A stretch of 64,000 nucleotides of DNA, taken from positions 1,005,537-1,069,536 of the forward strand of contig NW_018408567.1 of NCBI RefSeq assembly GCF_002113885.1, written 5' to 3'. The notes under the pieces are model-generated. The model ran no database searches. It saw only the letters and a list, made by a program, of their open reading frames with translations, and had not been told where the DNA came from. Of this stretch, positions 3,771 through 9,700 are shown piece after piece; position 1 is the first letter of the stretch, and each line of letters starts with the position of its first letter. A program made the position numbers and the translations under genes. Source of the stretch: Mizuhopecten yessoensis (taxonomy: Eukaryota).

Positions 3771-6700
3771 TTAGTCGGCTGCCTCCAAAGCTTTGAGGAA
3801 GTTCGCCTTTCGCTGTTTCACTCGGTCCTCCCTCTGGAGACGACTCATCTTGGATCGGTTCCACCTGCAATTACAGAAGAAAAACATAACCATGATGGTT
3901 AGCAATATCAAGGCACATAGTTAAATCTTAGAAATTAAAAATGAAGAATTTCTAATTCAACAATTGCTTTAGCACTGCCTTCTTCTTGGGGCAACAGACT
4001 TTCATCATGCTTTCTGTAGTTAGCCTTGTTATTTTAACATTACACAACATGGACTTTTTAAATGATATCATAAATACTCAATACCACAAAAACCGCTAGT
4101 ACCGCAGGGACGATTGTTTTATATGCCTGTCCAATGCCATGCGTAAACATTTTCTGCACAATACCTCAAATATGACAAGATACTGATTGAAACTAGATAA
4201 ATTTTCATATTATATGAAGACAAAGGTTAAGTTTAAGTTGAACAAAATATGTGCATGGCATTGTACATTTTTTTCTTACTCAAGACATATATAGGCCAAA
4301 TCCTCAACCTAACTCAAGACCTCCTTTAAATTTATCAGGGCTTTTAACTCATACAGGTTAATTATCTCATCAATGGATTCATAGGAATATTCCTTCTACA
4401 CATGCCAATAATAGAATGGTGACTCACCTCTTCACCTTGCCAGCTGGTTCCTTCTTCTGCTTTGTTGCACGGTCCGGATTGGCTCGGATGGTAGCGTGAC
4501 TCTTCTTGTACATCTCTTCCAGCTATACATGAACAAACAGCAACTTGTGTTTATCTCAGACATATAATCTAACTGGTCCTAACTCATGTACAAAACAATG
4601 CACAGGAATGCTAGACCATGTTCATAATGCATTTCAATTTCATTAAAACTTGATTATATGGGAAAGACGTTTGACATTTTATCGAGTTATCAGAATCACA
4701 TAAATCATATCCCAGAGGTCACAAGTGATCACTTCAACTAGCCACTGAAAAAACATCAGTGATAGACAAGAAATCAAAGATCACTCCAGGTCAAATGACA
4801 CGCATGTTTTCATCATCTATACTCAACATAATTGAAAGCATCAACGAATGGTTTCATATCCACTGCATTTTTACTCTTTTGCTTGCTATTGATTTATATT
4901 TACTTAATGAAAAAGAACACTACAACCACCACTTTCACGGCTCTGATGACAAAGTGAATATCTAACAGAGTTAAGGTAAACGATGCCCAAATACACATCA
5001 CACTTACATTTTCTGAAGTAAGGCCATTCTTGATGAACCTGGAGAACTGCCTCTTGTAGGCATCCTCATCCTCACCCTGTAGATGTGCCATATATCCAGC
5101 TACATGCTTGCCAAAGATATGGTTGCGGTGAACCTCAGCATTGAACTCGTTGCTCTCCCCATCGTATCCAGGGAAACGCTTTGTGCTGTAAAAATATCAA
5201 ATTGAAGCATTCTAAAATCCTTCATTAACCAAAACTTTGCTTGTAACAAGTTTGTAACATCAATTTCATTTTTTTCATGGTTTAACAAGTGACTGTACAG
5301 TATTCTTAGTGTAAAGAGTAATCAGATCATCTTAAATCATATCTGAAGATAGGTAACTGGACAAGAAGAGCAAACAGTGAAAAAACATCACCATTCATCT
5401 CAAGACCAGAACCGACCAACAGTCAAATGACACGCATGTTTTCATCATACTGACTCTTTCTTTTCTTATATCAGAATTTTGTACAAATCGGTTATAGGTA
5501 TTCAAAAGATTTAATTATCTTTTTTTCAAGACATAAATTGGTACTGTACTGAATAAGGACCAGTACCAATACTAGAGAGGATATGCAATTGGGTAAAAAA
5601 TACTTCAGGCTGTTCCAGAAATAAACGTATGGGAGGCCAGGCTGAGGGATATGAAGCACTTTTTCAGAGACCCCACCACCAATCAAATTTTGAAAGTAAT
5701 ACAGCATCAAGAATAGTAGATGGGTCTGATTTTAAAATCCTTCATTTACCAGAATGTTATTAACATCCCTTGCACATTTTGTTTGGTTAAACAAGTGACT
5801 CTACAGTATTCTTAGTGTAAAGAGTAATCAGATCATCTTAAATCATATCTGAAGATAGGTAGCTGGACAAGAAGAGCAAACAGTGAAAAAACATCACCAT
5901 TCATCTCAAGACCAGAACCGACCAACAGTCAAATGACACGCATGTTTTCATCATACTGACTCTTTCTTTTCTTATATCAGACTTTTGTACAAATCGGTTA
6001 TAAGTATTCAAAAGATTTAATTATCATTTTTGACCTGTTGAATGTGGGATAGATTTCAAGACATATTGGTACTGTACTGAATAAGGACCAGTACCAATAC
6101 TAGAGAGGATATGCAATTGGGGGGGAAAAAAACTCAGGCTGTTCCAGAAATAAACGTATGGGAGGCCAGGCTGAGGGAACCACTTTTTCAGAGACCCCAC
6201 CACCAGCCAAATTTTGAAAGTAATTCAGCATCAAGAATAGTAGATGGGTCTGATTTTAAAATCCTTCATTTACCAGAATGTTATTCTCATCACTTGCACA
6301 TTTTGTTTGGTTTAACAAGTGACTGTACAGTATTCTTAGTGTAAAGAGTAATCAGATCATCTTAAATCATATCTGAAGATAGGTAGCTGGACAAGAAGAG
6401 CAAACAATGAAAAAACATCACCATTCATCTCAAGACCAGAACCGACCAACAGTCAAATGACACGCATGTTTTCATCATACTGACTCTTTCTTTTCTTATA
6501 TCAGACTTTTGTACAAATCGGTTGTAAGTATTCAAAAGATTTAATTATCATTTTTGACCTGTTGAATGTGGGATAGATTTCAAGACATATTGGTACTGTA
6601 CTGAATAAGGACCAGTACCAATACTAGAGAGGATATGCAATTGGGGGGGAAAAAAACTCAGGCTGTTCCAGAAATAAACGTATGGGAGGCCAGGCTGAGG

Positions 6701-9700
6701 GAACCACTTTTTCAGAGACCCCACCACCAGCCAAATTTTGAAAGTAATTCAGCATCAAGAATAGTAGATGGGTCTGATTTTAAAATCCTTCATTTACCAG
6801 AATGTTATTCTCATCACTTGCACATTTTGTTTGGTTTAACAAGTGACTGTACAGTATTCTTAGTGTAAAGAGTAATCAGATCATCTTAAATCATATCTGA
6901 AGATAGGTAGCTGGACAAGAAGAGCAAACAATGAAAAAACATCACCATTCATCTCAAGACCAGAACCGACCAACAGTCAAATGACACGCATGTTTTCATC
7001 ATACTGACTCTTTCTTTTCTTATATCAGACTTTTGTACAAATCGGTTGTAAGTATTCAAAAGATTTAATTATCATTTTTGACCTGTTGAATGTGGGATAG
7101 ATTTCAAGACATATTGGTACTGTACTGAATAAGGACCAGTACCAATACTAGAGAGGATATGCAATTGGGGGGGAAAAAAACTCAGGCTGTTCCAGAAATA
7201 AACGTATGGGAGGCCAGGCTGAGGGAACCACTTTTTCAGAGACCCCACCACCAGCCAAATTTTGAAAGTAATTCAGCATCAAGAATAGTAGATGGGTCTG
7301 ATTTTAAAATCCTTCATTTACCAGAATGTTATTCTCATCACTTGCACATTTTGTTTGGTTTAACAAGTGACTGTACAGTATTCTTAGTGTAAAGAGTAAT
7401 CAGATCATCTTAAATCATATCTGAAGATAGGTAGCTGGACAAGAAGAGCAAACAATGAAAAAACATCACCATTCATCTCAAGACCAGAACCGACCAACAG
7501 TCAAATGACACGCATGTTTTCATCATATTTACTCCTTTTATTATCAGAATTTTGTACAAATCGGTTATTTGTATTCAAAAGAATCAATTATCCTTTTTGT
7601 CTGGTTGAATATGGGATGGATTTCAAGACATATATTGCCTTGCATGCAATGCGGGAAGGGTGGAACGTATGGGAAGGGTGGGAAGCATTATTTTTCAGAG
7701 ACCTTACCACCTATCAAATTTTAAAAATAATTAATATCAGAAATGATTTTAACCCTTTCACCACTGCAGACCATAATGGACTCATCCAGATCAATGCAAG
7801 GTGGAGTCTACTTAAGTTACTTAGGGGTGAAAGGGTTAAACCCACCACCAATAACATATCTTTACAGGTGCCTCCCACCTCTCCAATATGATCAATTATG
7901 GAACAGCCGTGATAAATCACTTGCTCATTTGATCAGTTTTTGCAGCAATGGTATTAATTTGACCTAGAAATAAAGGTTGAAGTAACCTAACCTAAGTAGA
8001 AACCACTGCACAAATATCTGTTGCATGGATAATTCAAGATTCTTAAAAGACATCAAGGATTTTAATATTACAATATTGATTTTTTTTTTTATTAAAAGTA
8101 TAATAAATGTCTCCCTTTAGTTTGAAAGGGAGACATAATGATGCATGATAATGCAATGTGTTTTTGTATTGTCCATCTGCAATTAGTCATGTTAATAAAA
8201 TTTCATATTTTAGGCCAGTCAAAATAAACTACTACTTGTCCAAATTAAAACCAATTGGGCTTGCTTTACCCATTTTGCAAAATACAAAGAGGTGCTACAA
8301 TGCAGGTACACTAGGATTTTATAACATTAGTAATCAGATCATCCTAAATCATATCCTGGTGCAGATCACTGGACATCAAAATCAGCAGTGATGATACATC
8401 ACCACCAATATGAGGACCAATGCTTACACCAGGTCAAATGACACGCATGTTATCATCACATCTACTCACACTTAAAAGGTTTGGTAAACACTGTCTCAAA
8501 TAAACATGTTCATCAAGTTTATATAAAAAAAATATGATACAGTTATTGCCCAGATAAAGTTCTAGTGATCTTGAAGTGTGCCTTGTTCTCGTGAATGAGG
8601 AGATTGGTAATAAAATGATATGCTACAGTCAGACAAAACGTAGAGGCCGACTTTCAGAAGACATCAATCATACCAGTGTTATCTTTATAAAGACTAAACT
8701 ATGCAATTGAATTAAAACAAAAATCCTTCACTGCATCAATTGAGGCCATGCTTCCTTGGAGATTCTACACTGTTTTTTGACACGCTAGTAGTATCAATTT
8801 ATGATGAACATATTGCGTCTTTCCCTCTATTTACCGTTTCGCAACATGCTGTTAAGTTCAATGTTCCATTTACCTGTGGGGGATATCTAATCCTCCATCC
8901 ACTGCACCTTTCAATGCACCGAAGACACGGGCACCAGTGGAAGTTCGGACAAGACCAGCATCCAGATAACACCTGAAGGCTCCAGCCTCACCATCAACAT
9001 CCTCAACGTAGTACTCATCACCATCCACCTCTGTCTGGCCAGCATACACTGTGTCCAGGTTAAACTGCTTCAGCAGCTGTAACAAACAACACCAGGTTGA
9101 TATAAATCATGGAAGTATTCAACAAAATATCATACTTGTCTCGAGATGCAATACACTTAAACTTTGAGGTGTTTTCAGCCTTTCAGTTTGCACTCCTTGT
9201 CAAATCTCAAAACCAAATCTTTGCACAAGCCTGAATTGTATTCAACAATGCTTCATTTGTCAAAAAAACAAATGCTATAAAAAACCTCATGATAAACCAG
9301 GGAGTTAAAAATAGAAAACCTAAAGAGCGAAAGAAAAGTAACAAAACTTGAATATTATAGGTGTTGTAGGTCTGCATTACAATGTTGAAGTTATCCTTGC
9401 AGCATAAAATACTTACAAATAACAAACAGCCTTTATTCACTTACCCTTCTTGCGAGCAGCAATCCGGTGCAGTAAGCAGCAGAATAATTGGTCAGCCCTA
9501 CCTTCACGCCATATTTTGGCAGTTCATGTGAATATGCACTGCAAATAATGTGATCACCTTCGATCCTGGCGTATGCTATCTACAATGCAAGTGAAATATT
9601 TTAACTAACTTGGTATAATAACCAAACAATATATATAGAAGATTTTCCCAAGAGTAAACAATATACCCAAAAACTGAATTTATTCGTTGAGATTTGTAAT

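What the first reader, a model, noticed from the sequence alone, without database searches (positions are those of the whole stretch)
4690..8459. Seven SNORD10/mgU6-77-like dual-target guides (U6 snRNA and 28S) in RPL5
Seen: every copy has CATGCGTGTCAT immediately 5' of D' TTGA, and the 5th nt upstream of D' is the G of GTCAT. Established, from recall: human SNORD10 has CATGCGTGTCAT-CTGA and guides U6 Cm77 and 28S Cm3787. U6 contains AUGACACGCA (10 perfect pairs) and 28S contains UGACGCGCAUG (11 pairs, one G-U). Three diverged classes (A, B-F, G) keep boxes and guide while the interior changes, which is the signature of selection on more than one copy. Sevenfold amplification of a spliceosomal U6 methylation guide is unusual.
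Basis: partly seen in the sequence, partly recalled or inferred. Interest (0 to 1): 0.7.

Follow-up and report, generated by a model that had tools for sequence, protein, structure and literature searches.

The report
SNORD10-like snoRNA genes in scallop RPL5
Two introns of a scallop's ribosomal protein L5 gene carry seven copies of a small guide RNA gene, the likely counterpart of vertebrate SNORD10, whose guide fits both the animal's own U6 spliceosomal RNA and its 28S ribosomal RNA; the find is real but fairly ordinary, because five copies are fresh tandem duplicates and such arrays are common in this genome.

Summary
Seven exact CATGCGTGTCAT-TTGA elements lie on the minus strand, and they are the only ones in the 988-Mb genome. 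Each sits in a well-formed 135-136-nt box C/D snoRNA gene. One gene (A) is in RPL5 intron 6 and six (B-G) are in intron 5.

All seven are the best genome-wide hits to Rfam SNORD10, but below threshold (24-28 bits against 37). They share SNORD10's 12-nt guide and its long internal hairpin.

The scallop's own U6 gives 10 Watson-Crick pairs, placing C77 at the methylation position. Its own 28S helix 71 gives 12 pairs, two of them G-U. The guide has U at both paired positions where the two targets differ (A in U6, G in 28S). This fits a dual guide.

- B-F lie in a 524-bp tandem repeat whose central units are 99.8-100% identical including spacers, so they say nothing about selection. Only three old lineages (A, B-F, G) do.
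- Intronic snoRNA arrays are common in this genome, so the amplification is not unusual.

RNA-seq shows heavy RPL5 splicing but no mature snoRNA; the libraries are unsuited to detect one. Methylation is untested.

Verdict: a new member (mollusc orthologue, new host gene, amplified) of a known family.

The parts
4685..4820 (-). snoRNA copy A (class A), the only snoRNA in RPL5 intron 6. C box ATGATGA, guide at 4795-4806, D' TTGA, 83-nt internal hairpin at 4708-4790, candidate C' TGATTT, D box CTGA at 4690-4693.
   Evidence: hairpin z -3.1; Rfam SNORD10 24.6 bits
5317..5452 (-). snoRNA copy B (class B-F), the first array unit, 131 nt upstream of the intron-5 3' splice site. Guide at 5427-5438.
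   Evidence: hairpin z -5.0; SNORD10 24.1 bits. It differs from D at 2 of 136 positions, while the spacer has 13 mismatches plus 36 gapped columns.
5823..5958 (-). snoRNA copy C (class B-F). Guide at 5933-5944.
   Evidence: SNORD10 24.4 bits
6347..6482 (-). snoRNA copy D (class B-F). Guide at 6457-6468.
   Evidence: identical to E; SNORD10 24.6 bits
6871..7006 (-). snoRNA copy E (class B-F). Guide at 6981-6992.
   Evidence: SNORD10 24.6 bits
7395..7530 (-). snoRNA copy F (class B-F), the last array unit. It has its own 5' flank and the best terminal stem of the class. Guide at 7505-7516.
   Evidence: SNORD10 26.8 bits
8329..8463 (-). snoRNA copy G (class G), 410 nt downstream of the intron-5 5' splice site. 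C box GTGATGA, guide at 8438-8449, 82-nt hairpin at 8352-8433.
   Evidence: hairpin z -6.6; best SNORD10 score, 27.9 bits
5209..7732 (.). Tandem array of about 524-bp units (snoRNA plus a 370-388-nt spacer). The central units at 5933-7504 are 99.8-100% identical; the edge units are 76-90% identical.
5186..8873 (-). RPL5 intron 5 (3,688 nt), holding B-G. It is removed as one intron.
   Evidence: Read overhangs at exon 6's upper edge (aligner at 5189; 5186-5189 CTGT is ambiguous with exon 5's first four bases) match 8878-8907, in 813-4265 reads per run.
4523..5007 (-). RPL5 intron 6 (485 nt), holding A.
   Evidence: Read overhangs at 5008 match 4493-4522.
8874..9076 (-). RPL5 exon 5.
   Evidence: Pfam Ribosomal_L5e, E 1.6e-26; translation
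5008..5185 (-). RPL5 exon 6.
   Evidence: Read depth 500-3000; translation; 43 homologous exon fragments
4428..4522 (-). RPL5 exon 7.

Best explanation
These are seven genes of one box C/D snoRNA family, the mollusc counterpart of vertebrate SNORD10 (mgU6-77). They are carried in introns 5 and 6 of the highly expressed RPL5 gene.

Architecture: terminal stem, C box, 3-nt spacer, 12-nt antisense element CAUGCGUGUCAU, D' (UUGA), an 82-83-nt hairpin that closes flush against D', a degenerate C' (UGAUUU), an 8-nt non-guide spacer, D box (CUGA), terminal stem.

Inferred mechanism: the RNAs are cut out of the spliced RPL5 introns as snoRNPs with fibrillarin. The single antisense element pairs with 28S rRNA helix 71 (12 bp) and with U6 snRNA nt 73-82 (10 bp). 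The 2'-O of the C paired to the fifth guide base upstream of D' is then methylated. That C is U6 C77 and the 28S C equivalent to human C3787.

History: three old paralogues (A, B-F type, G) have lost all flank similarity and most hairpin sequence but kept the boxes, guide, length and fold. The B-F type was then amplified recently by unequal crossing-over of a 524-bp unit.

Shown here: the sequence anatomy, the complementarity to the animal's own targets, the host gene and its splicing, and the duplication history. Inferred: accumulation of the mature RNA, both methylations, and how six snoRNAs are released from one intron.
For: - Guide and boxes: 7 exact matches against 0.22 expected, and none elsewhere in the genome.
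- Rfam: all seven match RF01290 SNORD10 full length (model 1-139), E 0.004-0.04 in the local search. They are the seven best hits in the whole genome; the next hit scores 21.8 bits.
- Guide identity: the Rfam consensus carries the same CAUGCGUGUCAU directly before D'.
- Internal hairpin: each class folds one long hairpin from the first base after D' to 3 nt before UGAUUU, with z -3.1, -5.0 and -6.6. The Rfam consensus structure has the same inner stem. The apical stem shows a compensatory change: CUGA/UCAG in A against GUGA/UCAC in B and G.
- Between classes: 5' block 87-90% identical, 3' block 83-96%, hairpin 55-65%, flanks 50-55%, which is the baseline.
- Own targets: canonical U6 gene L001 (118 bits) has AUGACACGCA with the C at position 77. 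Own 28S has GUGACGCGCAUG. Duplex energies are -16.1 and -19.9 kcal/mol.
- Wobble compromise: the two targets differ at four of the 12 positions. The guide has U opposite the two A/G differences, so it pairs with both. It matches only 28S at the two 5'-most positions.
- Independent homologues: two diverged genes on metagenome contigs (L019, L020) keep the same guide, boxes and long hairpin. They score 24-29.5 bits on SNORD10.
- Literature: SNORD10 guides U6 Cm77 (PMC7960923); 28S C3787 is fully methylated, guided by snoRD10 (PMC5027482); one guide modifies both U6 and 28S (Tycowski 1998, as cited in PMC3884663 and PMC6298559).
- Host expression: RPL5 exons reach depth 500-3000 and both introns are spliced.
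Against: - No hit reaches Rfam's gathering score. Most of the score comes from the roughly 27-nt C box, guide and D' block.
- D' is UUGA, not CUGA.
- No mature snoRNA signal in three RNA-seq runs. Region A has depth 1-2, equal to intron background. Region B has up to 14, but those reads run into spacers of other units, so they look like pooled intron reads from five units. The libraries were not made for small RNAs, so this is inconclusive rather than negative.
- U6 and 28S methylation in molluscs has not been measured.
- Identical units cannot be shown to be individually functional. The copy number may be misassembled, because two unplaced mini-contigs carry variant units.
- My shuffle test shows that 10-12-bp runs with G-U allowed are not rare against about 20 kb of rDNA loci. 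The complementarity is convincing mainly because it falls on the two known SNORD10 sites.
Confidence: 0.72

Rival explanations
1. The snoRNAs guide only 28S rRNA (helix 71 Cm). The U6 complementarity is a by-product of the similarity between the two target sequences and is not used in this animal.
For: The 28S duplex is longer and more stable: 12 bp at -19.9 kcal/mol against 10 bp at -16.1. The two 5'-most guide bases pair only with 28S. In L019 and L020 the spacer extends pairing with 28S only, to -22.5 and -23.9. The host is a ribosomal protein gene. No data on U6 methylation in molluscs were found.
Against: A 28S-only guide would be expected to carry C, not U, opposite the two G residues. 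U at exactly the two positions where U6 has A is kept in all three scallop classes, in L019 and L020, and in the vertebrate consensus. Ten uninterrupted Watson-Crick pairs anchored at D' in a 107-nt RNA are very unlikely by chance. In vertebrates the same element is reported to act on both targets (PMC3884663, PMC7960923).
Confidence: 0.18
2. Only one to three copies are working genes. The near-identical array units are neutral, very recent duplicates (or partly an assembly artefact) that add nothing functionally, and copy A may be a decaying paralogue.
For: Units C, D and E are 99.8-100% identical including spacers. Unplaced contigs and read polymorphisms show the array is variable or poorly assembled. 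A has the lowest hairpin z-score, the most diverged C'-to-D block and no read enrichment.
Against: All copies keep intact boxes, guide and terminal stem. A has kept its exact length and fold while its flanks drifted to baseline, which argues for constraint. B keeps 134 of 136 positions while its spacer took 5 indels.
Confidence: 0.08
3. These are not snoRNA genes. A repeated intronic element happens to contain box-like motifs and a U6/28S-like antisense word.
For: No Rfam hit at gathering score. No mature RNA seen. Part of the spacer is a dispersed repeat.
Against: The dispersed repeat lies in the spacer, not in the snoRNA. Three copies with unalignable flanks keep C, D', C' and D, the terminal stem, the guide and the hairpin in register. 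The same design occurs in two unrelated metagenome contigs.
Confidence: 0.02

Closest known systems
Vertebrate SNORD10 (mgU6-77; Rfam RF01290)
   Same: Same 12-nt antisense element directly 5' of D', with the same fifth-base position. Same two targets in the animal's own RNAs. A long form of about 136-140 nt with an internal hairpin between D' and C'. No usable D-side guide. Intronic in a housekeeping gene (PMC7960923, PMC5027482).
   Different: D' is UUGA, not CUGA. The spacer between the C box and the guide is 3 nt where the consensus has 4. The hairpin sequence is unrelated, and the vertebrate loop motif GUGUUCUAC is absent in the scallop (present in L019 and L020). The score is below Rfam's threshold. 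The host is RPL5, not eif4a1 as in Xenopus (PMC8609340). There are seven copies in three classes; the single copy per vertebrate genome is my recollection.
Tandem intronic snoRNA arrays (rice, Drosophila, and other introns of this scallop genome)
   Same: Several copies of one snoRNA in one intron at regular spacing of 370-390 nt, with units made by tandem duplication (earlier notes s1-528015, s1-509069, s1-559175, s1-519428, s1-519514).
   Different: This array mixes one recent five-unit array with an old diverged paralogue (G) in the same intron and a third (A) in the next intron.
Other U6-specific box C/D guides (SNORD7, 8, 9, 67, 94; Drosophila mgU6-47 and mgU6-68)
   Same: Nucleolar-type C/D snoRNAs that aim at U6 (10.1101/2024.09.19.613955; PMC3884663).
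   Different: They target other U6 positions. Among them, dual U6 and 28S action was reported for only one of the first U6 guides (Tycowski 1998 as cited in PMC3884663); PMC7960923 and PMC5027482 assign U6 Cm77 and 28S Cm3787 to SNORD10. Drosophila mgU6-68 aims at C68, not C77 (position inferred from my own count of the fly U6 sequence, not tested).

Membership tests
Box C/D snoRNA | C box RUGAUGA near the 5' end and D box CUGA near the 3' end, brought together by a terminal stem | tested here: met
   All seven have ATGATGA or GTGATGA and CTGA. Terminal stems are 4-8 bp; B-E have a 2-nt bulge.
Box C/D snoRNA | Antisense element of at least 10 nt ending at D or D', with the target nucleotide opposite the fifth base upstream | tested here: met
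   10 bp with own U6 and 12 bp with own 28S, both starting at the base next to D', with C opposite base 5.
Box C/D snoRNA | Accumulates as a stable small RNA bound by fibrillarin, Nop56, Nop58 and Snu13 | tested here: inconclusive
   RNA-seq runs X21, X22 and X24 show only intron-level reads. The libraries are not suited to 136-nt RNAs. Protein binding cannot be tested with these tools.
SNORD10 / mgU6-77 (RF01290) | Antisense element CAUGCGUGUCAU directly 5' of D' | tested here: met
   Identical to the Rfam consensus in all seven copies.
SNORD10 / mgU6-77 (RF01290) | Score at or above Rfam's gathering threshold (37 bits) | tested here: not met
   24.1-27.9 bits. They are still the seven best hits genome-wide.
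SNORD10 / mgU6-77 (RF01290) | Long internal stem-loop between D' and the 3' part (inner stem in the Rfam consensus structure) | tested here: met
   Hairpins of 82-83 nt, z -3.1 to -6.6, closing flush with D'. L020 has z -5.8 and L019 z -0.8.
SNORD10 / mgU6-77 (RF01290) | Canonical D' box CUGA | tested here: not met
   UUGA in all seven. D' boxes are often degenerate (general knowledge).
SNORD10 / mgU6-77 (RF01290) | Guides 2'-O-methylation of U6 C77 and of 28S C3787 (human numbering) | not testable with these tools
   Both target sequences exist in the species. Methylation needs RiboMeth-seq or primer extension.
SNORD10 / mgU6-77 (RF01290) | Descent from the same ancestral gene (orthology), for example shown by intermediates in other phyla | tested here: inconclusive
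   Two further homologues from an unidentified eukaryote share the vertebrate loop motif and the scallop-type UUGA.

The most novel reading that the evidence does not exclude
The dual U6/28S specificity of SNORD10 is an ancient, actively maintained design and not a vertebrate curiosity. The guide keeps U at both positions where U6 has A and 28S has G, in vertebrates, a mollusc and a third unidentified eukaryote. The unusual 80-nt hairpin, kept in fold and length while its sequence drifts, may be the platform that lets a nucleolar snoRNP also engage U6, for instance through a LARP7-like bridge. In the scallop this guide moved into a ribosomal protein gene and was amplified, which would tie U6 modification capacity to ribosome production.
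Probability: 0.2. Interest if true: 0.55.

Novelty: new member of a known kind. Interest (0 to 1): 0.3.

Why it matters
It extends the one classic dual-substrate methylation guide (U6 snRNA plus 28S rRNA) from vertebrates to a protostome. It also shows that Rfam's SNORD10 model misses such homologues. The guide's U residues opposite the A/G differences between the two targets give a simple sequence argument that both pairings are under selection. The locus provides three naturally diverged paralogues for testing what the conserved internal hairpin does. As a gene layout it is one more intronic snoRNA array in a genome already full of them, so the amplification itself carries little news.

Tried and rejected
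1. A second guide on the D side. The conserved GAUAUGAUUUA-N-GAUGAU block looked complementary to the other strand of 28S helix 71 (GUCAUCU). Shuffle tests show it is no better than chance, and no rRNA or U6 match beats shuffles. It is also not shared by class A, L019 or L020. I read the block as a degenerate C' plus a short spacer.

2. My first recollection that the 28S site equals yeast Cm2197/snR76 was wrong. PMC5027482 places C3787 at the base of helix 71, paired to G3771. That matches the C of GUGAC; by my own count, the yeast equivalent is about C2304.

3. The apical UGAUGU as the C' box. It sits inside a helix that shows a compensatory change, so I prefer the basal UGAUUU. This remains an inference.

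4. Tandem Repeats Finder found nothing, because the period exceeds 500. BLAST of one unit resolved the array.

5. Cross-species comparison of RPL5 introns. Scans of prokaryote genome contigs and viral contigs found nothing.

6. No other box C/D candidate turned up in the remaining RPL5 introns.

Exons were searched one by one by reference.

8. The metagenome pattern was deliberately restricted to TTGA so as not to pull human SNORD10 contigs.

9. N stretches in the rDNA loci were left as they are.
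Full report
**Observation.** The 12-mer CATGCGTGTCAT occurs seven times in the window, all on the minus strand, at 4795, 5427, 5933, 6457, 6981, 7505 and 8438. Chance would give 0.22, and no shuffle reached seven. With the adjacent YTGA, these are the only matches in the whole 988-Mb assembly. Reading the minus strand, every copy has the following parts:
- a C box (AUGAUGA, or GUGAUGA in G);
- three spacer bases;
- the 12-mer;
- UUGA as D';
- a long insert;
- a conserved GAUAUGAUUUA block;
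- eight more bases;
- CUGA as the D box;
- a terminal stem.

All copies are 135-136 nt long and align without gaps.

**Host gene.** Translating the minus strand gives RPL5 exons, and two exons hit Pfam Ribosomal_L5e at E 1.6e-26 and 1.4e-20. I kept the exons separate and did not join them into a spliced model. Counting exons makes 8874-9076 exon 5, 5008-5185 exon 6 and 4428-4522 exon 7. Copies B-G therefore lie in intron 5 (5186-8873, 3,688 nt) and A in intron 6 (4523-5007). Raw RNA-seq reads of three runs cover exon 6 at depth 500-3000. Their overhangs match exactly the ends of exons 5 and 7. The 3.7-kb intron with six snoRNA genes is thus removed as one intron from a very active gene. Earlier notes on this genome call it a scallop. 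The assembly size and contig count fit, from my recollection only, the Yesso scallop assembly.

**What the copies are.** Nothing in the window reaches an Rfam gathering score. With permissive thresholds all seven match RF01290 SNORD10 over the full model (24.1-27.9 bits; E 0.004-0.04 for the 5.5 kb searched). The model consensus carries the same CAUGCGUGUCAU directly before its D'. Searched against the whole genome, these are the seven best SNORD10 hits; the next hit has 21.8 bits.

Each class folds its 82-83-nt insert into a single long hairpin. The hairpin starts at the first base after D' and ends 3 nt before UGAUUU, with z-scores of -3.1 (A), -5.0 (B) and -6.6 (G) against dinucleotide shuffles. 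The Rfam consensus structure has the same inner stem. I therefore read the layout as C, guide, D', hairpin, degenerate C' (UGAUUU), 8-nt spacer, D. The assignment of C' is an inference. An apical UGAUGU is also conserved, but it lies in a helix with a compensatory change (CUGA/UCAG in A, GUGA/UCAC in B and G).

**Targets in this animal.**
- U6: the best U6 gene (L001, 118 bits, with a terminal T run) contains AUGACACGCA. Counting from the GUAC start, the C opposite guide base 5 is C77.
- 28S: the rDNA contains GUGACGCGCAUG in the conserved helix-71 region. Parts of those loci read N and were left so.
- Duplexes: 10 Watson-Crick pairs with U6 (-16.1 kcal/mol) and 12 pairs including two G-U with 28S (-19.9 kcal/mol).

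The two targets differ at four of the 12 positions. At the two A/G differences the guide has U, the only base that pairs with both. At the two 5'-most positions it matches only 28S. This is what a guide under selection for both substrates should look like. It is the same in all scallop classes, in the vertebrate consensus and in two further homologues described below.

The literature agrees on the vertebrate function. SNORD10 (mgU6-77) is listed as the guide for U6 Cm77 (PMC7960923). 28S C3787 is fully methylated and guided by snoRD10, at the base of helix 71 (PMC5027482). One of the first U6 guides was reported to modify both U6 and 28S (Tycowski 1998, as cited in PMC3884663 and PMC6298559).

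A caution: with G-U allowed, runs of 10-12 pairs are not rare against about 20 kb of rDNA loci. The weight therefore lies in the match falling on the two known SNORD10 sites, and in the ten uninterrupted Watson-Crick pairs in a 107-nt U6.

**No second guide.** The conserved 3' block looked complementary to the opposite strand of helix 71 (GUCAUCU). Shuffled controls do as well, and no rRNA or U6 match of the D-side sequence beats shuffles.

**Duplication history.** BLAST of one unit shows a tandem array from 5209 to about 7732. The units at 5933-7504 are 99.8-100% identical over all 524 bp, spacers included. The B unit is about 90% identical, and the flank above F is 76-85% identical. Identity among C, D, E and the body of F therefore reflects very recent duplication, not selection. 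B does show some contrast: 2 of 136 differences in the snoRNA against 13 mismatches plus 36 gapped columns in the spacer.

The real signal lies between the three classes. The 5' block (C box, guide, D') is 87-90% identical and the 3' block 83-96%. The hairpin is 55-65% and the flanks 50-55%, which is the baseline for unrelated AT-rich sequence here. Yet length and fold are kept. So three old paralogues are under constraint, and one of them has been freshly amplified.

The spacer contains a dispersed repeat of about 120 nt. Two unplaced mini-contigs are 97-98% variants of the B-C unit, and RNA reads show matching polymorphisms. The copy number in the assembly should therefore not be taken as exact.

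Earlier notes on this genome list arrays in RPS6, TCP1, RPL10 and RPL7A, and two other multi-copy U6-guide families. I did not re-test those notes.

**Expression.** Region A has depth 1-2, the same as the rest of intron 6. Region B reaches 14 in one run. However, those reads carry variants of the other units and run on into their spacers, so they look like pooled intron reads from five units. The libraries are ordinary RNA-seq, so accumulation of the mature snoRNA is neither shown nor excluded.

**Relatives elsewhere.** A metagenome scan used the C-box, guide and TTGA pattern, restricted to TTGA on purpose to avoid human SNORD10. It found two contigs of one metagenome. Both carry well-formed, mutually diverged genes with the following shared features:
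- the same guide;
- 8-9-bp terminal stems;
- a long internal hairpin (z -5.8 and -0.8);
- a UGAUAG C' candidate;
- a loop GCUGUGUUCUACAGC that matches the vertebrate consensus motif GUGUUCUaC.

They score 29.5 and 24.1 bits on SNORD10. They contain no RPL5 exons, and the organism is unknown. They bridge the vertebrate and scallop forms and support homology. In Xenopus, snoRD10 lies in eif4a1 (PMC8609340), so the host differs.

**Verdict.** It is overstated on selection across seven copies and on the rarity of the amplification. This is a new member of a known family, in a new host gene and a familiar array layout. Function is inferred from sequence and remains untested.

Noticed in passing
window 45774-49644: Eight copies of a 111-nt unit at spacing of about 410 nt. 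This is the DDX39-intron snoRNA array noted earlier (s1-519514). It shows that arrays are routine in this genome.
   Followed up: partly
window ~6661-6783 (and the same part of each array unit): About 120 nt of the array spacer is a dispersed repeat, with 70-79% matches on more than 20 other contigs. It is probably a SINE- or MITE-like element caught in the duplicated unit.
   Followed up: partly
G000:C40030 (L021, 312 nt) and G000:C5781 (L022, 200 nt): Unplaced mini-contigs that are 97-98% variants of the B-C array unit. L021 includes the 3' 85 nt of a snoRNA copy with GACAUGAUUU instead of GAUAUGAUUU. The same variant appears in RNA reads of run X24 at window 5341. Array alleles and copy number are unsettled.
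   Followed up: partly
L019:197-337 (-) and L020:7946-8094 (+), metagenome Ga0126335: Two diverged SNORD10-like genes from an unidentified eukaryote. They have the same 12-nt guide and UUGA D', plus a hairpin loop GCUGUGUUCUACAGC that matches the vertebrate SNORD10 consensus motif. No recognisable host exons lie nearby.
   Followed up: partly
window 8097-8174 (-): A perfect hairpin, GUCUCCCUUUCAAACUAAAGGGAGAC, followed by a U-rich tract inside intron 5. It gives a weak, surely spurious hit to the bacterial PyrG leader (28 bits against 65). Possibly an inverted-repeat element.
   Followed up: no
L002-L007 (other U6-like loci of G000): Several U6 variants or pseudogenes. For example, L002 has ACAGAGG and GACAUGCA, which would break the guide pairing. 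Only L001 looks like the canonical gene among those scored.
   Followed up: no
window 5059, 5074, 5122 (RPL5 exon 6): Three common coding-region polymorphisms among the RNA-seq individuals, each seen in about 20-80% of reads in some runs.
   Followed up: no
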